A DNA stretch of 64,000 nucleotides, taken from assembly GCF_001194135.2 (NCBI RefSeq), contig NC_068986.1, forward strand, positions 47,989,538 through 48,053,537, read 5' to 3'. Positions 23,925 through 44,271 of this stretch are shown here, piece after piece (position 1 is the stretch's first letter; each line of letters begins with the position of its first letter). The position numbers were made by a program, and so were the translations under genes. The DNA is from Octopus bimaculoides. Lineage: Eukaryota. The notes beneath the pieces were generated by a model. That model did no database searches. It saw nothing but the letters and a program-made list of their open reading frames with translations, and was not told the origin of the DNA.

Positions 23925-24700
23925 AAATAATAATGGCTTCAAATTTTGCCAAAGGGTTAGCAATTTTGGTGGGAGGGGATGAGTCGATTACATTGACCCC
24001 AGTGTTCAACTGCTATTTATGTTATCGACCCCGAAAGGATGAACGGCAAAGTCGACCCCGGCGGAATTTGAACTCAGAACGTAGCGACGGGCGAAATACA
24101 GCTAAGCATTTCGTCCAGCGTGCTAAAGATTCTGCCAGCTCACCGCCTTAATAATAATAATTATTATTGTTTCAAATTTTTTGCCACAAGGGTAGCTTGG
24201 AGGCGGGGATGAGTCGATCACATCGACCCCATTGTTCAACTGGTACTTATTTTATCGACCCTGAAAGGGCGAAAGGCAAAGTCGACCTCGGCGGAATTTG
24301 AACTCAGAACGTAGCGACGAGCGAAACACCACTAAATAATAATGGTTTCAAATTTTGCCACAAGAGCAGCAACTTGAGGGGTGAGAATGAGTCGATTATA
24401 TCGACCCCAATGTTCAACTGGTACTTATTTTATCGAAAGAATGAAAGGTAGAGTCGACCTCGGTGGAAAAATAGTAATACCCAAAACAAACTAGGTGCGG
24501 GTCATTAATGTCATGGGAGGTAATTCGATGCTTAAGGTTCATAATATTACTAGTATAGCTATAGGCACAAGGCCTGAAATTTTAGGGGAGAAAGGGCCGG
24601 TCGATTACATCGACTCCAGTGCTCAACTGGTATTTATATTATCGACTTCGAAAATACGAAAAGTTAAGTCAACCGCGGAGGAATTCGAACCCAGAACGTA
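23925..24700 (-). mobile_element. Tandem cluster of four SINE family C copies. Family also at ~7060-7180, 10540-10715, 12500-12725, 30490-30670, 30690-30805+33417-33480, 33495-33705, 41035-41240, 41965-42180, 42850-43070, 47510-47710
   Basis: Shared core GTTCTGAGTTCAAATTCCGCCGAGGTCGACTTTGCC…TAAGTACCAGTTGA…GGGGTCGATGTAATCGAC. Confidence 0.88.
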
Positions 24701-28315: not shown

Positions 28316-30479
28316 TTCTGGGCAAACAATACTTTCTTACAGAAAATTAAGTAGCTGTTCCTAGCTGACGTTGGCATACCGATTTCAAATCTGTAATTAA
28401 TTTTTTTCTATCGCGTCTAGATTTTTGTGTAAAATGCAAATTACTTGGTAAAATTTCTTACCACGTCCAGCTATTGGTTTTAATCGGTTTAATACCAGTA
28501 ATATGAATCTTGCGTTCCATGGTTAAAGCAATTTTTGTTTGCCAACTATATATAAATTCTAACGATTTTGATCAATCAAATTTTGAGTTGACAACATTGA
28601 GTAAAGAGCATAGTAACGGCCCAACGGTCACTCGCTTGTGTGAGTCTAGTAGAGCGGCTGTTAAAACTCTCTCTTGTGGTAAGCAAGTAACAGGCTGTGG
28701 TAACTTATGTATTTCTATAGCATTTGTTTTGTACTACGGTGTGTATTTCTTTTTATTTTGTACATCGTAATTATTACTTTCTAGGTTTCTTTTTTTTTTT
28801 CTTTCAGATATTGTATGGTAATTAAAATGCAATCAAATAGCCGAGCTTGTGCAAATCACAGACAACTTCTGCTATATCTGTGGACATTATGCACCTAAGA
28901 GACAACGTAGAAACATAACAGCAAAGATTAAACTTGCCTACAAGTATTATTTTGACTAAGTTAAGCAAGCAAGAGAGGGACTGGACACCACATACTTGAG
29001 GTGCACAGTGCAATGCAATGTTAATAGCTTGGATGAATGGTAAAAGAAAAGCTTCGCCATTCTCAGTCCCCATAGTTTAGATGAACCGGGAAAAAAATCA
29101 CTTCAATGTTTGTTATTTTTGTTTGACAAAGATTGCTGGTTTTACATAGAAAAACAAATTTAAAAAATCATGTACCTAAACTACGAGGCGGCAATAAAAC
29201 TAGTACCACACGATGAAACAAGTCTCCGACTGTACGAAGGTGAGATGGAGAGAATATTTAGAGTGGAGGAAGAAAAGAGAGAACAAAGAGTCCAAGATAA
29301 AGGAAAGAAAATACGAGGAGGAAATGGAGTATGGTATGTGACGTACCCCAAAAACATAGAAACAAAAGATAATTAAGTTTCATTCAATAGTAAGAGGGAA
29401 GGTGCCATCATACATATATGTAGAGGATATGAAACCAATAGTGATTGAAAAGGATAACGACAGGAAGTTGAAGGAGATAGTGTTCACCCACCAGGAGTGA
29501 GGGTAGAATTCAAAGAGCTGCCACCAGTAGTGGATCTAAGAGACATTGAACCATTGATGAGGTATTATTAAAAAGAAAAATAAGTATGTTAAATTGTAGG
29601 AAAAATGAGTAAAATTGTTTTATGCTAGGAAAAATAACGGTGAATGTATATAACGGTTCAAATGGCACTGCATGGGAGTGGAGACCATGCGACATTTTCA
29701 TTTTTATATAATTTCATCTCATCTCATTTACATTCGTTTTATGGTTTTTGTCCCCACTGTGGTCTTGCCTGTCCTTGTGATGTCCCTGGCTGTATTTAGG
29801 GCTTTATGTCTAATAAAGAAATGACGATGAAACAAGTCCTCCACTAGCAACAACAGACAGCAGTTGATCTGAAAATTTTGCAAATGATATAGAAATAGGG
29901 CAAGATGGTGTATATGTTACAGATAAAACTAGTTCCCCACATTTGTTTAGTAAAGCAGAGTTAAATTACTTATTGCGCGATTCGGAATTACCGAAAGAAA
30001 AGACAGAGTTGCTTGGTTCCAGACTTCAAAAATGGAATTTTCTCCAGCCTTCCCATTTCTGCCATCGCCATTTGTAATTTTCATCATTTTATTTTCATCG
30101 GGAAAATGTTTTGTTTCTGCTATGATATCAGTAGCCTGTTGGAAAGAATTGGCTTTCACTATGACCCAGAAGAATGGAGACTGTTCATTGACTCTAGTAA
30201 AGCTAGCCTTAAAGCTGTATTACTGCGCAACAGCAATGAAAAACCTTCATCTCTGTTCACTAGTTATGCAAGTACGATTAACATAAAACATGACAGAGTA
30301 AAGTAATAGAGGCAGGTGCGGGGGAAAATGAAAAATAGACATTTTCAGTTAACAAAATCTGGACGTGATAGAGAAATTTAGATATCAGATCTGAAAATAG
30401 CATTAGAAATTTGGTAGGAATCGGTAGTTTACGCGTCTATAACAACAACATAAAAAATATTGAAATTTGCTACCTAGTG
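28316..30479 (+). mobile_element. Decayed Chapaev3-like (CMC) DNA transposon with internal deletion
   Basis: TTA on both flanks; 3' terminus ...CCTAGTG. Transposase remnants DNFCYICGHY (~28860), WTPH, NHFNVCYFCLT, AIKLVPHD and EEWRLFIDSSKASLKAVLL (~30170). Subterminal inverted motifs at ~28380-28425 and ~30355-30410. The superfamily name comes from recalled motifs. Confidence 0.72.
29228..29823 (+). mobile_element. 5'-truncated copy of the same ORF1-only retroelement family, inserted into a Chapaev3-like transposase
   Basis: 15-bp TSD ACGATGAAACAAGTC (29210-29224 and 29824-29838). C-terminal peptide (…KVPSYIYVEDMKPIVIE…PPGVRVEFKELPPVVDLRDIEPLMRYY*) and 3' UTR are homologous to 30806-31440 on the minus strand. 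Confidence 0.88.
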
Positions 30480-31062
30480 TTATTTTTCAGCTTTTGGTAC
30501 AGGGCTAGTCGATTACACCGACTCCAGTGATCAACTGGTACCTATGTTATCGACCCCGAATGGATGAAAGACAAAGTCGACCCCGACAGAGTTTGAACAC
30601 AGAACATGAACACGAATAAAATGGTGCTAAGCATTTTGTCCGGCGTGCTTACTCTCCTGCCAGCTCGCCGCCTAAATATTCTTTTCCTCTCTAGGCACAA
30701 GGCCCGGAATTTTGGGGGAGGGAGCCAGTCGATTAGATTGATCATGGTACTTAATTTGGCCTCGGCGGAATTTGAACTCAGAACGTAAAGACAGACGGAA
30801 TACCGATTTTTTTATTAGACATAAAGCCCTAAATACAGATGCGGACACCACAAGGACAGACAAGACCACAGAGGGGACAAAAACATACCACGAATGTAAA
30901 TGGGATGAAATTATATAATAATGAAAAAAAAAAAAGGAAAATGGCCGCACGGGCCCCACTCCCATGCGGTACCATTTGAACAAATATATGTACTATCTAC
31001 AATTGTTCTTTTTCCTACTATATCACCATTATAACATCATTTAACATACTTTTTTTTCTCTT

Positions 31063-32087
31063 TTAGTATAACTTCGTCAATGGTTCAATATCTCTCAGAT
31101 TCACTACTGGTTGCAACTCCTTGAACTCCACCTCCACTCCTGGTGGGTCAACACTATCTCTACACATCTCTTTCAACTTTCTGTAGTTCTCTTCTTCAAT
31201 CAGTATTGCCTTCACATCCACTGCGTAGACGTATGAAGGCACCTTCACTCTTACTATTGAATTAAACTTAATAATCTTTTTTTCTGTTTCTACATTCTTT
31301 CAGTATGTCACATAATACCACACTCCATCTCCTCCTCGTATATTCTTTTCTTTATCTTGTACTTTTTGTTCTCTTTTTCCTTCCTCTATCCCAAATAATC
31401 TCTTCAACTCTCCTTCCTGCAGTTGTATTTCCGAATCCTTCTCCATTGGAACAACCGGTATCTTTACTGGTAACTCCACTTTCTTTTTACTTTCCCTTTT
31501 TTCTTCCTTCCTACTAACCTCCATCACAGTTTCTTTTCTCACCTCTTCTCTCTTCTTTTTCTGCTTCTCTGACAGAGAACTCATTCCTCCGCTTCTCCTT
31601 CTTTTCTTTTTAACCATAGTGAATCCATTCTCCGTTTCTTTTTCTGTTGCCTTGTTCTGTACTACCTGGTCCACACTCTCTTGTCTCTCCTCCCGTTCTC
31701 TTTGTGGCTTTCTTTGGGTACACCATGCTTTCATGTGAAACACACTGGCGGCCTACCCTCCACAGAAACTCTCAGTCTCACATCTTCTAGCAGCACAATC
31801 TCATCCACCACACTATTCAAGTCCTCCGTTGTTGCCTGAATCGTCAATTTGATACCATATCCCCAGTAGTTCACCTTCTGGGTCCTTGTAGCCTTCACAA
31901 TCTTCCCGTCTTTCATATTGTATGTTATGGCTGTCATCAGCCATTCTTCTTTCAGTTCGGGTGACACCTTACCCACTCGCACCTTGGCCACACGTTTGCC
32001 GCAGTACGGAAGCAAGAGCACCCATTCCTCTGTTCTTATTGCCACTGTGGAGTGCTTTATTGCTTCCTCCTCCGTTGTGAAACGCAC
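31063..32087 (-). pseudogene. ORF1/gag-like module 2 (paralog of module 1; broken knuckle; K/E-rich linker; C-terminal domain)
   Basis: Shares RVG..P....EW, RTQ..N(Y/W)WGYG and EGRPPxC with module 1. A frameshifting deletion leaves CF...HMKAWC. Contains KKKRRR and an in-frame stop at ~31300 before the C-terminal domain ending IEPLTKLY*. Confidence 0.78.
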
Positions 32088-32151
32088 CTCTTTTAATTTT
32101 CTATACTTTTCTTTTTCTATTAAAATCCATCTCGCCTCCTTATCGCAACGG

Positions 32152-33350
32152 TCAGAGAGGTTCAGTTTGACAATGTCTTTTATTTTGGATATCTTCTCTA
32201 TTTTTTGTGTATCGATATGACATCAAATATATGCCGTTCCTATGTACCTCTTGCGTCTGTATGTCTGTTCTTTTTTGTTTTTGTGATTCTGTACTACCTT
32301 GCGTCTGTTCTATATTTCTTTGTGACTGTATATCTGTCTGTAGTTCATGTTTGTGTGACTGTAAGTCTGCATGTTGTGTTTGTGTGTCTGTGTTTTCAGG
32401 TTCTGTGCTTTTTGGTTTCTGCAACTCTGTGTTATCTTCTTCCCTTCTGAGTGTGTGTATGTCTGTGTGTTTAAGCATCTGTGTATCTGTCTGTCTGTGC
32501 GATTGTGAGACTGTATGGTTCTGTGGTAATGTTCTGCTGCTATTATCTTCTTTCCTCAGTGATCCCACNNNNNNNNNNNNNTTGTTTTCCATTATTTCTG
32601 GACACCTTCTTTTAATGTGACCTCTTTTGCCACATTCGTAGCACTTTGGAGGTCTCCCCTCCAACATTATGTCCAGTTTGTCCTCGTTAGGCAGCTCCAG
32701 TGTCTCCGGTATGTCACTGTAAACTTTCTGACTTGCTATAAAAAGCACATTCAATCCATACCCCCACCAATTTATTTGTTGGGTTCTGCTTATCATAATT
32801 ATCCTTGCATCTTCTCCTTCTCTTTCAGGAAAAACTGCTGCTATTACCCATTCCAACTCTATTTTCGGTGGGATCCTACCCACTCTATTCCACGTTGGAC
32901 GTCTACCCAACTTATTGGGAAAGAGCATCCAATTTCCATTGGCTAGTGTTTTATTGGCGCATTTCTTTGCTGCCTCCTCCGATACAAATGTTATTTCTAC
33001 AGACGCGTATGTCTTGCCTCTTGTAAAAAAAACGACACATCTTCTTGCAATTCCTTCAAACACTCCTCCACCTCCTCCTTCGTTGCGCTCTCTATTCTTT
33101 TATTTTTCCTTGAAAAGGATTTATATTCCACGACTCCAATTTCCATCTTCATCCTTTCCTCCTCTGATGGGGTCAACTTTACGTTTGGCCCCTCCTTCTT
33201 TATCATTTCTTTATATTTTTCAATTTTCTCAGCCATGTCTTCATTCCAATGTATTTCATGTTGCTTCAGCAGGCCTGGGACGACGGAGGCTCGACTCCCC
33301 GTCGCTGCTGCATACGTCTTCATTTTCTCCATCTCAGCAACGCCCACCAA
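32152..33350 (-). pseudogene. ORF1/gag-like module 1 (charged N-terminus, RRM-like segments, CX2CX4HX4C knuckle), frameshifted
   Basis: ORFs 32997-33350 and 32152-33063 overlap in different frames. EGRPPKCYECGKRGHIKRRCP is a canonical zinc knuckle preceded by a GxP motif, as in L1/Tx1-clade ORF1 proteins. Confidence 0.8.
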
Positions 33351-34834
33351 AAAATAGTGGCGTTATACTAAAAAATTCGCAGCGAGTAATGACACGTCCG
33401 ACCAGTAAACTCACGGCAGACGAAATACCGCTAAGCATTTTATCCGGCGTGCACGTTTTTGATTGCTCGCCGCCTAAATATTGTGAGATATGTTGGTTTC
33501 AAACTTTGGCAAAAGACCAGCAATTTTGGGTAGGACTAGTCAATTACATCAACTCCAGAGCCCCAACTGGTGCTTGATTTACAGAATCCGAAAGTATGAA
33601 AGGCAAAGTCGACCTCGGCGGAATTTGAAACCAGTACGTAAAGACGGACGAAATGCTGTTAAGCATATTGCCTGGCATGCTAACGATTTTGCCAGTTCGC
33701 TGCTAAATATTGTGAGACATTAAAATGTAGTGAAGGCGCGTGGCCGAGTGGTCAGGGCGTTGTTCTTGCGATCGCTAGATCGTGGGTTCGGTTCCCAGAC
33801 AGAGCAGCGCTTTGTATTCTTGAGCAAAACACTTCATTTAACGTTGCTCTAGTTTTCCTTTCGATCAGCGCGGAATATTGGCTTGATCGCATAGCCAGCG
33901 GAGTAGCGTCTTCAAAGGTAAAACCGATGCAAGGTGCATTGTGTAACAACATTTTATAATCTGGTCGGTCACGTGAATATTAAAATGTAATAATTATGCT
34001 TTAATTAGTAAAGGTGGCGAGCTGACAGAATTATTAGAAAGTTAGAAAAAAAAAAAATATGTGAAAATTCCTTCCGACTCTTTACGCACTGAGTTCAAAT
34101 TCTTTACGGAACAACTTTGCTTTTCATTCATCCTGGGTTGATGAAATAGAGTATCAGTAAAATACTTTAGTCATGATATCGCCTAATCCCTTCCTTGCGA
34201 AAATACTGGCCTTAGGTCCAATTCAGAAACAATTATTTGAAGACAGTGGATTGACAGAATCATTAGCCCATCGGTAGGACTGCTTTGCAGGATTTGTTGT
34301 GACTTTTAACTTTCGGAGTTCAAATTTGCCTTTCAGCCCTCCAGAGCCGATTAAATGAAATACCAGTCAAATACTGAAGACGACAGTATTGAATACCACC
34401 CTCCCCTCAGAATTGCTAGTGTTATGATATACTGTTAGATATAATTGTGTTTTAACAAGTCATTCAGGTTTTACAAGAAAATAGAGTTCATTTCTTTGTT
34501 TAAGAATATGTAGAGGACCTGGAAATTTGACCAAAATAAACAAAGGAAAAAAACAAAAAAAACAATACGGACTAATTATGATAACAATTAAAATGATTTT
34601 GTTCACATTCTCTACTTGTCGATAAATCAGTTTAGCTGTTGTTACAAGGTATGATTAACCGTAATAAAATGTGCATAGGATATAAGCTTCATTTTCATTG
34701 TCGAAGATAACTAGAAAACAGAAATGCTGAAGATATTCTTAGAAAGAGTGACTGATACTGGATCCTATCTTGTAGCGTAGTTGAAAGGGGACAGGCGAAG
34801 AAGCGTGCACCTCAGGCGACTCTTTTATGCGACA

Positions 34835-42596: not shown

Positions 42597-44271
42597 GTAG
42601 TTATATATTTTTTCCTATTTCGAGGAATTTGTGTTCGTTTTTTGGCCGTTTTGATTGTAATTAATTCGGTCACGTTTTGATTTAAAATAAATTTTGTCGA
42701 AATTATAGTAGTTTTTCGCTATTTTTAGGTCAATGTAATTAATACCAGCAATTTCTGAGTTCATTGAGGCGATCAAACCAATCTTTTACGGTCATTATCA
42801 GGATGTATTAGGACTTGCAAAACCAACGGGATCACTTAACTAAATAAAGTTGTTCTAATTTTGGCACAATGCCAGCAATTTTGAGAGGAGGGTGCAAAAT
42901 CGATTACATCGGTTCTAGTACTTGACTGGTACTTATTTTATCGTACCGGAAAGGGTAAAACGCAATGTTGGCCTCATAGTATGTCAAATCCGTACGTAAA
43001 GGGACGGAAGAAATGTTATCTAACATTTTGTCCGGCACGGTGACGATTCAACCAGCTCGCCTCCTTAATAAAGTTTGAAATATTAAGTATTAAATTTCTG
43101 CCTTATAAATGCGGTTTACATAGGAGTCATCTTTGCTATCGATGTTTTATCTTTTATCTCTTACCTGTTTAGTCAGTCATTGGACTGCGGCCCTAGTACT
43201 TATCGTTTTTTAAACCTTCTACTTATTCCATCGGCCTCTATTGCCGAGCCGACGATCCTCTTTTTCTTCTGACTAACTAATAACGCCTCACTCAACGTCT
43301 TGAGTGCAGCTTGCCTCCCCCCCCCCAGTATTAGTTAGCGCATGTTTAGATTGTCAGAGATGAGGCAATTAAAATCATTAGCTTTACAGATATATACGCA
43401 GGTGTGGCTGTGTGGTAAGTAGTCTGCTTCCCAACCACATGGTTCTGGGTTCAGTCCCATTGCGTGGCACCTTGTGCAAGTTTCTCCTACTAAAGCCTCG
43501 GGCCAAACAAAACTTTGTGAGTGGTTTTGATAGACGAAAATTGAAAGAAACCCATCGTATANNNNNNNNNNNNNNNNNNNNNNNNNNNNNNNNNNNNNNN
43601 NNNNNNNNNNNNNNNNNNNNNNNNNNNNNNNNNNNNNNNNNNNNNNNNNNNNNNNNNNNNNNNNNNNNNNNNNNNNNNNNNNNNNNNNNNNNNNNNNNNN
43701 NNNNNNNNNNNNNNNNNNNNNNNNNNNNNNNNNNNNNNNNNNNNNNNNNNNNNNNNNNNNNNNNNNNNNNNNNNNNNNNNNNNNNNNNNNNNNNNNNNNN
43801 NNNNNNNNNNNNNNNNNNNNNNNNNNNNNNNNNNNNNNNNNNNNNNNNNNNNNNNNNNNNNNNNNNNNNNNNNNNNNNNNNNNNNNNNNNNNNNNNNNNN
43901 NNNNNNNNNNNNNNNNNNNNNNNNNNNNNNNNNNNNNNNNNNNNNNNNNNNNNNNNNNNNNNNNNNNNNNNNNNNNNNNNNNNNNNNNNNNNNNNNNNNN
44001 NNNNNNNNNNNNNNNNNNNNNNNNNNNNNNNNNNNNNNNNNNNNNNNNNNNNNNNNNNNNNNNNNNNNNNNNNNNNNNNNNNNNNNNNNNNNNNNNNNNN
44101 NNNNNNNNNNNNNNNNNNNNNNNNNNNNNNNNNNNNNNNNNNNNNNNNNNNNNNNNNNNNNNNNNNNNNNNNNNNNNNNNNNNNNNNNNNNNNNNNNNNN
44201 NNNNNNNNNNNNNNNNNNNNNNNNNNNNNNNNNNNNNNNNNNNNNNNNNNNNNNNNNNNNNNNNNNNNNNN

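What the first reader, a model, noticed from the sequence alone, without database searches (positions are those of the whole stretch)
30792..33430. Full-length RT-less retroelement encoding only gag/ORF1-like protein (HAL1-like system in a mollusc)
Seen: a 2611-bp insert bounded by a 14-bp TSD that splits a SINE. It has a short 5' leader, then ORF1-like coding sequence (charged N-terminus, RRM-like segments, EGRPPxC-CCHC knuckle, basic linker, extra C-terminal domain), a ~250-nt 3' UTR and an A-rich tail. No RT, APE or RLE motif is present, and the only gap is 13 N. Known: L1/Tx1 ORF1 proteins are RNA-binding chaperones, ORF1-only 'half-L1' (HAL1) elements exist, and mammalian ZCCHC3 has a similar knuckle context. 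Inference: a non-autonomous family that packages its own RNA and borrows RT in trans; I do not know it to be described in cephalopods. This copy is decayed (frameshifts, stop).
Basis: partly seen in the sequence, partly recalled or inferred. Interest (0 to 1): 0.85.

Follow-up and report, generated by a model that had tools for sequence, protein, structure and literature searches.

The report
ORF1-only LINE derivative in octopus
This is a decayed 2.6-kb insertion of an octopus retrotransposon family that keeps a LINE's first gene (an RNA-binding ORF1 protein) and its 3' end but has no reverse transcriptase, so it must borrow one, as mammalian HAL1 and fly HeT-A do.

Summary
Window 30806-33416 (minus strand) is a 2611-bp insertion flanked by a 14-bp target-site duplication (13/14). 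The joined flanks restore an intact SINE.

Its coding sequence belongs to a large cephalopod protein family. In Octopus sinensis, O. vulgaris, Argonauta hians and a marine metagenome contig, members of that family sit directly upstream of an APE+RT+zf-RVT ORF2 that is most similar to human L1 ORF2p. The protein is therefore a LINE ORF1 of the L1/Tx1 superfamily.

The window element has no ORF2. Neither do a second, 5'-truncated copy in the window (29225-29823, with its own 15-bp duplication) and six loci in three Octopus species plus one Logan read-assembly contig of unknown species. The ORF1 stop is followed by a ~260-nt 3' UTR. Its terminal motif (…CCTTGTGG…AATAAAnAAAT(G)) is shared with the autonomous LINEs. 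Divergence between RT-less copies is mostly synonymous (omega about 0.2-0.46).

One correction: this copy is not a canonical unit. It is an in-frame chimera of two diverged family members joined at 32090/32091.

The 13-N gap lies in a linker. Its flanks are collinear with a paralogue, but the frame across it cannot be verified.

Verdict: a real new member of a known kind (HAL1/HeT-A-like). Trans-mobilisation is inferred, not shown.

The parts
30792..30805 (.). Target-site duplication, left copy (CAGACGGAATACCG)
   Evidence: only two matches in the window, 13/14 identical; expected 0.02
33417..33430 (.). Target-site duplication, right copy (CAGACGAAATACCG)
30690..30805 (+). 5' half of the SINE copy that was split by the insertion (the 3' half is 33431-33490)
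   Evidence: the joined flanks align across the junction with intact SINE copies
30806..33416 (-). The whole 2611-bp RT-less insert: a chimera of two ORF1-only units
33333..33416 (-). 5' leader (84 nt). It is homologous to the 85-nt leader of the independent TSD-flanked element in L002 and starts within about 10 nt of it.
33041..33332 (-). Unit 1 N-terminal charged region, starting at ATG 33332 (MEKMKTYAAATG...)
   Evidence: 93% identical to P0001 residues 1-102
33025..33032 (-). 8-base homopolymer carrying a +1 frameshift (expected reading ...VSFF|TRGKTYASV...)
   Evidence: compared with P0001
32584..33024 (-). Unit 1 module A (predicted tandem RRM-like fold) plus an intact CCHC knuckle at 32596-32646
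   Evidence: zf-CCHC, E 2.3e-5; pLDDT 89; best fold match is tandem RRM, not significant; 88% identical to P0001
32569..32581 (.). Assembly gap (13 N) just after the knuckle, inside the linker
   Evidence: The flanks are collinear with P0001. The frame across it cannot be verified.
32223..32568 (-). Unit 1 T/Q/H-rich low-complexity linker, built of degenerate short repeats. A frameshift lies near 32228.
   Evidence: 80% identical to P0001 residues 259-337
32091..32222 (-). Start of the unit 1 C-terminal domain (...RWILIEKEKYRKLKE), cut off at the chimera junction 32090/32091
   Evidence: P0001 continues ...KLKEAFPTDINPLG...
31734..32090 (-). Unit 2 module B. It is 5'-truncated, starts at VRFTTEEEA and ends at EGRPPVCF. 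Its knuckle is destroyed by a deletion or stop near 31735.
   Evidence: 30% identical to module A, E 1e-22; 70-84% identical to P0003, P0024, P0026; DNA homology to L006 and L007 starts at 32090
31303..31733 (-). Unit 2 basic (K/R/E-rich) linker. An in-frame TGA stop lies at 31300-31302.
   Evidence: 67-68% identical to P0024 and P0029
31066..31299 (-). Unit 2 C-terminal domain (...ILIEEENYRKLKEMCRDSVDPPGVEVEF...). The stop codon is at 31063-31065.
   Evidence: 79% identical to P0029 residues 309-386. The same domain type ends autonomous ORF1s (FPxDVG motif).
30806..31062 (-). 257-nt 3' UTR ending ...CCTTGTGG...GGGCTTTATGTCTAATAAAAAAAT. There is no poly(A) tail.
   Evidence: homologous to window copy 2 and L006; terminal motif shared with the autonomous LINEs L001, L004, L009
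29225..29823 (+). Second, 5'-truncated copy of the same family (last ~130 codons plus 3' UTR, 77.6% identical). It has its own 15-bp TSD, ACGATGAAACAAGTC, at 29210-29224 and 29824-29838.

Best explanation
What it is. The insert is a dead copy of a non-autonomous non-LTR retrotransposon family of octopods. The family descends from L1/Tx1-superfamily LINEs by loss of ORF2. A canonical unit is about 1.7-1.9 kb and consists of:
- a leader of roughly 85-190 nt;
- one ORF1 (charged N-terminus, a module predicted to fold as two RRM-like domains, an EGRPPxCxxCGxxGHxxxxC knuckle, a disordered linker, and a small C-terminal domain);
- a 3' UTR of a few hundred nt (257 nt in the window copy) that ends in the same motif as the autonomous elements.

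How it most likely works (inferred). The element is transcribed and its ORF1 protein coats its own RNA. The endonuclease/reverse transcriptase of a co-resident autonomous L1/Tx1 element then copies that RNA into a nicked target, probably through the shared 3' end. This produces target-site duplications and 5' truncations.

This particular copy. It is a chimera. A P0001-like unit lacks the last ~40 codons of its ORF and its 3' UTR. It is joined in frame at 32090/32091 to a 5'-truncated unit of a different subfamily. The join arose either by template switching of the RT between two RNAs or by read-out transcription of a nested insertion. The chimera then inserted as one piece into a SINE.
For: Shown:
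- Insertion with a TSD that restores a SINE.
- Homologous ORF1s are directly followed by Exo_endo_phos, RVT_1 and zf-RVT ORF2s in O. sinensis (L001), Argonauta (L004), a metagenome contig (L005) and O. vulgaris (L009).
- That ORF2 matches human L1 ORF2p over its full length (E 4e-42), against 8.5e-20 or weaker for R2.
- There is no ORF2 in the window, nor next to the ORF1 in L002, L003, L006 (two units), L007, L008 and L010.
- The second window copy and L002 have their own TSDs.
- The same post-stop 3' UTR occurs in window copies 1 and 2 and in L006, L007 and L008.
- The terminal motif is shared with the autonomous LINEs.
- pN 0.25 against pS 0.65 over 302 codons between window unit 2 and L007. 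Omega is about 0.46 between the two window copies.
- The family is large: 620 cluster representatives at E<=1e-3. The 21 hits that carry a source name are all from octopods.
- Chimera: unit 1 is 88-93% identical to P0001 and unit 2 is 67-84% identical to P0003, P0024, P0026 and P0029. DNA homology to unit-2-type elements begins exactly at 32090.

Inferred: RNA packaging by ORF1p, use of ORF2p in trans, and the route by which the chimera formed.
Against: - No experiment or transcript evidence shows mobilisation in trans or RNA binding.
- Only a dozen loci could be inspected, so the genome-wide ratio of RT-less to autonomous copies is unknown.
- L006 and L007 have assembly gaps downstream of ORF1, and the window copy has a 13-N gap.
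- Part of the synonymous-biased divergence could have built up while the ancestors still carried ORF2.
- The NJ tree is unbootstrapped and places autonomous ORF1s in two positions. It is unresolved whether ORF2 was lost once or several times.
- The RRM assignment rests on a non-significant Foldseek match (E 0.03, TM 0.36).
Confidence: 0.85

Rival explanations
1. The insert is a processed pseudogene, that is, a retrocopy of the mRNA of a host gene (a domesticated ORF1- or ZCCHC3-like RNA-binding protein). It would then not be a transposable-element family of its own.
For: The insert looks like an mRNA copy: leader, ORF, 3' UTR with AATAAA, TSD. Annotators call many family members 'uncharacterized protein' genes. 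The O. sinensis model P0006 is drawn with an intron.
Against: Hundreds of diverged intronless copies exist. Several have their own TSDs and 5' truncation. P0006 is encoded by a single exon for 601 of its 623 residues and is followed by ORF2, so it is a LINE. The 3' terminus is shared with autonomous LINEs and lacks a poly(A) tail. Head-to-tail tandem units occur.
Confidence: 0.06
2. The insert is a one-off, internally deleted copy of an autonomous LINE. ORF2 would have been lost in this copy only, during or after insertion, and no RT-less family would exist.
For: Internal deletions and rearrangements are common in dead LINE copies. This copy is visibly rearranged, being a chimera.
Against: The same ORF1-stop-to-3'-UTR arrangement recurs in independent copies. 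These are window copy 2 (77.6% identical, own TSD) and L006, L007 and L008, with analogous arrangements in L002 and L010. They come from three Octopus species plus one contig of unknown species.
Confidence: 0.05
3. The structure is an assembly artefact. The scaffold would join two unrelated repeat copies at the 13-N gap, so the two-module, RT-less structure would not exist in the genome.
For: The window is a gap-rich draft with 15 N runs, and the gap lies inside the element.
Against: The chimera junction (32090/32091) is about 480 bp from the gap, in uninterrupted sequence. Both gap flanks belong to the same P0001-like unit in the right order. The two outer ends carry matching TSD copies and the two halves of one SINE.
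Confidence: 0.03

Closest known systems
HAL1 ('half-L1') of mammals
   Same: HAL1 is a non-autonomous derivative of a LINE of the L1 superfamily. It keeps only ORF1 and depends on the partner's ORF2p. It arose repeatedly during mammalian evolution (PMC5753468, citing Smit 1999 and Bao & Jurka 2010). Like HAL1, the octopus elements show TSDs, 5' truncation and a multi-copy family.
   Different: The ORF1 here is not the mammalian Transposase_22 (type II) protein. It is an RRM-like module plus a CCHC knuckle plus a C-terminal domain (type I-like), with no Pfam Transposase_22 match. The host is a cephalopod. There is no poly(A) tail: elements end in AATAAAnAAAT(G). The family looks highly diversified and includes chimeric and tandem forms.
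HeT-A and other ORF1-only telomeric Jockey-clade elements of Drosophila
   Same: These also encode only a Gag/ORF1 protein with CCHC knuckles and rely on the RT of related elements. ORF2 was lost many times, and ORF1-only lineages give rise to new ORF1-only lineages (bioRxiv 10.1101/2025.06.09.658640). They also form head-to-tail arrays.
   Different: They belong to a different LINE clade (Jockey, not L1/Tx1) and are telomere-specific with a host function. The octopus copies are dispersed (inside a SINE, inside another decayed sequence) and flanked by TSDs.
Type I ORF1p of L1/Tx1 and plant L1 elements (Khazina & Weichenrieder classification, as summarised in PMC5203782)
   Same: The architecture is an RRM-type domain or domains followed by a CCHC zinc knuckle. 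It is encoded upstream of an APE-RT ORF2 that carries a C-terminal zinc-binding domain.
   Different: The RRM fold here is only predicted, and no Pfam RRM or DUF4283 match was found. The extra conserved C-terminal domain (…KLKExFPxDVG…) is not, to my knowledge, part of the published definition.
Autonomous L1-Tx1 LINEs of Octopus (13 recently active families reported in O. vulgaris, PMC13282606)
   Same: They have a homologous ORF1 (29-39% identity to the window pieces) and share the 3'-terminal motif. They are the likely source of RT.
   Different: They carry a ~3.4-kb ORF2 (APE, RT, zf-RVT), which the window element lacks entirely.

Membership tests
Non-LTR retrotransposon insertion (TPRT product) | Target-site duplication flanking the insert, with the empty site reconstructible | tested here: met
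   14-bp TSD (13/14), unique in the window. The joined flanks restore a SINE.
Non-LTR retrotransposon insertion (TPRT product) | Family members share a defined 3' end and show 5' truncation | tested here: met
   Window copy 2 is a 599-bp 5'-truncated copy with the same 3' UTR and its own TSD. The L002, L006 and L010 3' ends are alike.
LINE ORF1 protein (L1/Tx1 superfamily) | Homologues are encoded immediately upstream of an APE+RT ORF2 in the same element | tested here: met
   L001, L004, L005 and L009 show ORF1 followed by Exo_endo_phos, RVT_1 and zf-RVT. ORF2 matches human L1 ORF2p at E 4e-42 over its full length. L1 versus Tx1 subclade was not resolved.
Type I ORF1p (RRM + CCHC) | CCHC zinc knuckle | tested here: met
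   Pfam zf-CCHC at E 2.3e-5, above the gathering score, at 32596-32646. The second knuckle is broken.
Type I ORF1p (RRM + CCHC) | RRM-fold RNA-binding domain | tested here: inconclusive
   The AF2 model has pLDDT 89 and a secondary-structure order consistent with two consecutive RRM-like (beta-alpha-beta) units. The best PDB match is IMP3 RRM12 with probability 0.97, but E 0.03 and TM 0.36. There is no Pfam RRM hit.
ORF1-only non-autonomous LINE derivative (HAL1-like in function) | Encodes ORF1 but no endonuclease or RT, as a property of the family rather than of one copy | tested here: met
   No ORF2 similarity in the window. The RT-less arrangement occurs in six loci of three Octopus species and one contig of unknown species. 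The census is small.
ORF1-only non-autonomous LINE derivative (HAL1-like in function) | ORF1 kept under purifying selection after loss of ORF2 | tested here: inconclusive
   Omega is about 0.2 (302 codons) and 0.46 (119 codons) between RT-less copies that share the RT-less 3' UTR junction. dS is saturated, and the timing relative to ORF2 loss is not established.
ORF1-only non-autonomous LINE derivative (HAL1-like in function) | Mobilised in trans by the ORF2p of an autonomous partner | not testable with these tools
   Only indirect evidence: a shared 3'-terminal motif with autonomous LINEs.
Mammalian HAL1 family proper | ORF1 homologous to mammalian L1 ORF1p (Transposase_22: coiled coil, RRM, CTD) | tested here: not met
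   No Transposase_22 hit at E<=1 for the window pieces or at E<=0.01 for ten family members. The architecture differs. It works like HAL1 but is not a member.
ZCCHC3-like host proteins | Sequence homology beyond the zinc knuckle | tested here: inconclusive
   hmmscan against Pfam returned only zf-CCHC families. No ZCCHC3 sequence was compared directly.

The most novel reading that the evidence does not exclude
Octopods may harbour an old, highly diversified radiation of ORF1-only L1/Tx1 derivatives. These would keep their ORF1 under selection, outnumber and out-diversify their autonomous partners, and reshuffle by RT template switching into chimeric multi-module ORF1 genes and head-to-tail arrays. 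That would be a parasite-of-a-parasite system on the scale of Drosophila HeT-A-like elements, but dispersed through the genome.
Probability: 0.45. Interest if true: 0.6.

Novelty: new member of a known kind. Interest (0 to 1): 0.5.

Why it matters
ORF1-only LINE derivatives are well documented only in mammals (HAL1) and in Drosophila telomeres (HeT-A-like).

A third, independent case would differ from both. It sits in a lophotrochozoan, uses a different ORF1 type, and its copies are dispersed through the genome. It would show that loss of RT with retention of a selected ORF1 is a recurrent strategy of LINE parasites.

It would also offer a natural system for asking what ORF1p contributes in cis.

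On the practical side, it explains hundreds of 'uncharacterized CCHC-type' gene models in octopus annotations. It also bears on how LINE expression in octopus tissues is interpreted.

Tried and rejected
- Word-indexed protein searches found almost nothing: 0 hits with module A and 2 hits with a 24-sequence profile. The full HMMER scan was needed.
- Pfam gave only zf-CCHC for every piece and relative. There was no RRM, Transposase_22, DUF4283 or ZCCHC3-type match.
- PDB sequence search hit only retroviral and cellular zinc knuckles.
- The first AlphaFold run, on a 2-sequence alignment, was useless (pLDDT 39). The second, with 56 sequences, was good. Foldseek against the PDB still gave no significant match.
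- P0001 and P0029, the closest O. bimaculoides proteins, are not on record with coordinates. The unit 1 DNA beyond the junction, and the sequence hidden by the gap, therefore could not be compared.
- The L003 3' end was too decayed to define a TSD.
- The L007 3' UTR runs into a 2.1-kb gap.
- I considered whether the gap could hide ORF2 and rejected it as unlikely. In autonomous relatives ORF2 follows the C-terminal domain, not the knuckle, and unit 1 continues collinearly after the gap.
- The NJ tree of modules was not used for firm conclusions because it has no support values.
Full report
1. The observation.

The sequence at 30792-33430 is as described. The two 14-mers CAGACGGAATACCG (30792-30805) and CAGACGAAATACCG (33417-33430) are the only matches to that pattern in 64 kb (expected 0.02). 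They enclose 2611 bp. I joined the left flank to the right flank and searched the window. Several intact copies of the same SINE align straight through the junction: 33613-33717, 24056-24123, 42046-41989 and 41115-41074 (alignment). The 14-mers are therefore a true target-site duplication, and the insert split a SINE.

The element lies on the minus strand. In order it has:
- an 84-nt leader;
- an ATG at 33332;
- a charged N-terminal region;
- a conserved module ending in EGRPPKCYECGKRGHIKRRC (Pfam zf-CCHC, E 2.3e-5);
- the 13-N gap;
- a T/Q/H-rich repetitive linker;
- a second conserved module ending in EGRPPVCF with a destroyed knuckle;
- a basic linker;
- a small C-terminal domain, with the stop at 31063-31065;
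- a 257-nt 3' UTR.

The element ends in AATAAAAAAAT, not in a poly(A) tail.

It is decayed in at least four places:
- a +1 base in an 8-base homopolymer (33025-33032);
- a frameshift near 32228;
- a deletion or stop in the second knuckle near 31735;
- an in-frame TGA at 31300-31302.

2. The assembly gap.

The gap (32569-32581) falls three codons after the complete knuckle, in the variable linker. Both sides belong to the same unit. The knuckle side is 88% identical to residues 99-241 of an O. bimaculoides paralogue (P0001), and the linker side is 80% identical to its residues 259-337, in the right order. The outer ends carry the two TSD copies and the two halves of one SINE. Continuity of the locus across the gap is therefore supported.

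With 13 N as written, the knuckle frame and the linker frame coincide and stay open for 139 codons. The N count is only an estimate, however, and P0001's gene model skips exactly this stretch. The frame cannot be verified with the data at hand.

The gap is unlikely to hide an RT. In autonomous relatives ORF2 follows the C-terminal domain, not the knuckle.

3. What the protein is.

Pfam and PDB sequence searches recognise only the zinc knuckle, and the word-indexed protein search found nothing. A full HMMER scan with a profile of the two modules found 620 cluster representatives at E<=1e-3 and 149 at E<=1e-10. The 21 of the 30 looked-up hits that carry a source name are all from Octopus bimaculoides, O. 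sinensis, O. vulgaris or Argonauta hians.

The decisive evidence is genomic context. In each of the following loci the homologous ORF is followed within about 40-530 bp by reading frames that match Exo_endo_phos, RVT_1 and zf-RVT:
- O. sinensis (L001);
- Argonauta (L004);
- a marine metagenome contig (L005);
- O. vulgaris (L009).

The Argonauta ORF2 aligns over its whole length with human LINE-1 ORF2p (E 4e-42). R2 proteins score 8.5e-20 or weaker, and only over the RT core.

The family is therefore the ORF1 of L1/Tx1-superfamily LINEs. The subclade was not resolved. L1-Tx1 families are reported as recently active in O. vulgaris (PMC13282606).

An AlphaFold model of module A built on 56 homologues is confident (pLDDT 89, pTM 0.74). 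Its secondary-structure order is consistent with two consecutive RRM-like (beta-alpha-beta) units. The best PDB match is a tandem RRM (IMP3 RRM12, probability 0.97), but the score is not significant (E 0.03, TM 0.36). 'RRM-like' is plausible and not proven.

Full-length members, autonomous or not, end in a conserved small domain (…KLKExFPxDVG… or …KLKEMxxxxVDPxGVEVEF…).

4. Is the RT-less state a property of a family?

Yes, as far as it could be sampled.
- tblastn with the ORF2 of L001 and L004 finds nothing in the whole window (best E 0.05).
- About 1 kb from the insert lies a second copy in the opposite orientation (29225-29823). It is 5'-truncated to the last ~130 codons plus the 3' UTR and is 77.6% identical. 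It has its own 15-bp TSD, ACGATGAAACAAGTC. It also runs from the ORF1 stop directly into the same 3' UTR.
- In O. vulgaris, L002 holds a 1.74-kb element. It has its own TSD, an 85-nt leader homologous to the window's, an ORF1 and a 3' end AATAAAGAGAAATG, with no ORF2 within 8 kb. L003 is similar but more decayed.
- In O. bimaculoides (L006 with two units head to tail, L007) and O. sinensis (L008), elements of the unit-2 subfamily again go from the stop codon into a homologous 3' UTR with no ORF2 within 7 kb. L006 and L007 have assembly gaps.
- A 1.9-kb Logan contig (L010) shows the same arrangement in yet another subclade.

The 3' termini of RT-less and autonomous elements share a motif:
- window copy 1: …TTGTCCCCTCTGTGG…CCTTGTGG…TAATAAAAAAAT;
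- L009: …TTGTCCCCTCTTTGTTGGCCCCTTGTGGGTAATAATAAAAAA;
- L001: …GCCCTTGTGGCCAATAAAAAGAAT;
- L004: …GCCCTTGTGGCGAATAAAGAAATG
.

Divergence between RT-less copies is biased towards synonymous change. Between window unit 2 and L007, pN is 0.25 and pS is 0.65 over 302 codons (omega about 0.2, with dS saturated). Between the two window copies omega is about 0.46 over 119 codons. The ORF was therefore evolving as a protein while these lineages diverged. Whether all of that divergence came after the loss of ORF2 is not established.

5. A correction: this copy is a chimera.

The two modules are only 30% identical (E 1e-22) and belong to different subfamilies.
- Unit 1 (33416 down to 32091) is 88-93% identical to P0001. 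It follows P0001 into the start of its C-terminal domain (…RWILIEKEKYRKLKE). P0001 then continues …AFPTDINPLG… to its stop.
- The window instead continues in frame with VRFTTEEEAIKHS…. This is the interior of a module of the P0026/P0003/P0024 subfamily (70-84% identical).
- DNA homology to full-length unit-2-type elements (L006, L007) begins exactly at 32090, at GAGGTGCGTTTC.

The join is about 480 bp from the gap, in uninterrupted sequence, so it is not a scaffolding artefact. One TSD brackets the whole, so the chimera existed before or during integration. Two routes fit:
- The RT switched templates from a unit-2 RNA to a unit-1 RNA. A GAGG microhomology is likely but could not be checked, because no unit 1 DNA was available.
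- A 5'-truncated unit 2 inserted into a unit-1 master copy. Transcription then started at the unit-1 promoter and ended at the unit-2 3' end.

None of the 150 best database proteins has two modules. There is therefore no evidence that the two-module form is a propagating subfamily.

6. Mechanism.
- Shown: insertion by a TSD-generating, 5'-truncating process; ORF1 homology to LINE ORF1; absence of RT; a shared 3' terminus; a coding constraint.
- Inferred from established knowledge of LINEs, HAL1 and HeT-A: the element's ORF1p binds its own transcript, and the ORF2p of a co-resident autonomous L1/Tx1 element carries out target-primed reverse transcription, probably recognising the shared 3' end.

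7. Comparison with known systems, and novelty.

Functionally this matches mammalian HAL1 (an ORF1-only L1 derivative that arose repeatedly; PMC5753468). It also matches the ORF1-only telomeric Jockey elements of Drosophila, where ORF2 loss is recurrent and ORF1-only lineages spawn new ones (bioRxiv 10.1101/2025.06.09.658640).

It is not a member of HAL1 proper. The ORF1 is of the knuckle-bearing (type I-like) kind, with no Transposase_22 match.

I found no description of ORF1-only L1/Tx1 derivatives in cephalopods in the searchable literature. Repbase and Dfam could not be consulted.

I rate it a new member of a known kind.

Noticed in passing
L009 2722-17026 (O. vulgaris OX597840.1): The autonomous ORF1+ORF2 LINE forms a head-to-tail tandem array. 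At least three units have a period of about 5.28 kb, and their ORF1s are 99.7-100% identical. The 3' end of each unit abuts the 5' leader of the next. The metagenome contig L005 (an ORF2 C-terminus directly upstream of the next ORF1) and the RT-less pair in L006 show the same head-to-tail arrangement.
   Followed up: partly
L001 9700-9780 and 15340-15370: The O. sinensis autonomous LINE sits inside an (ATT)n microsatellite, which is present on both flanks. This could be coincidence or a target preference like that of some Tx1-clade elements. The window copies are not in microsatellites.
   Followed up: no
window 28826-29224 and 29839-30306: The 5'-truncated second copy interrupts a decayed protein-like sequence (…ITDNFCYICGHYAPKRQRRNITAKIKLAYKYYFD… / …SPHLFSKAELNYLLRDSELPKEKTELLGSRLQKWNFL…). 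This sequence has no Pfam match and is probably another old repeat or pseudogene.
   Followed up: partly
P0029 (O. bimaculoides A0A0L8G4Z0): The C-terminal half is 67-79% identical to window unit 2, but the N-terminal module groups with a different subclade in the NJ tree. The protein is either a mosaic element or a mosaic gene model, which hints that recombination between subfamilies is common.
   Followed up: no
P0007 (O. bimaculoides A0A0L8FKL1), residues ~247-450: The linker contains an exact tandem duplication of about 100 residues (TQAEEENIVDHTEEKKERQKYETEK…IAKLEEIM occurs twice).
   Followed up: no
L008 8105-8260: A tRNA-like SINE is inserted in the 3' UTR of the O. sinensis RT-less element, so that copy predates a burst of SINE activity.
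   Followed up: no
window 33725-33810: A tRNA-like sequence (gtggccgagtggtcagggcg…gatcgtgggttcggttccc) lies directly downstream of the SINE cluster. It is probably the head of another SINE. It was not scanned with ARAGORN.
   Followed up: no
window, 15 N runs (e.g. 1095-1634, 43562-44271, 53407-54309): Most assembly gaps are bordered by (TA)n, (CA)n or (ATAC)n-type microsatellites. Gap placement in this draft therefore follows simple repeats. The 13-N gap inside the element also borders the repetitive linker.
   Followed up: no
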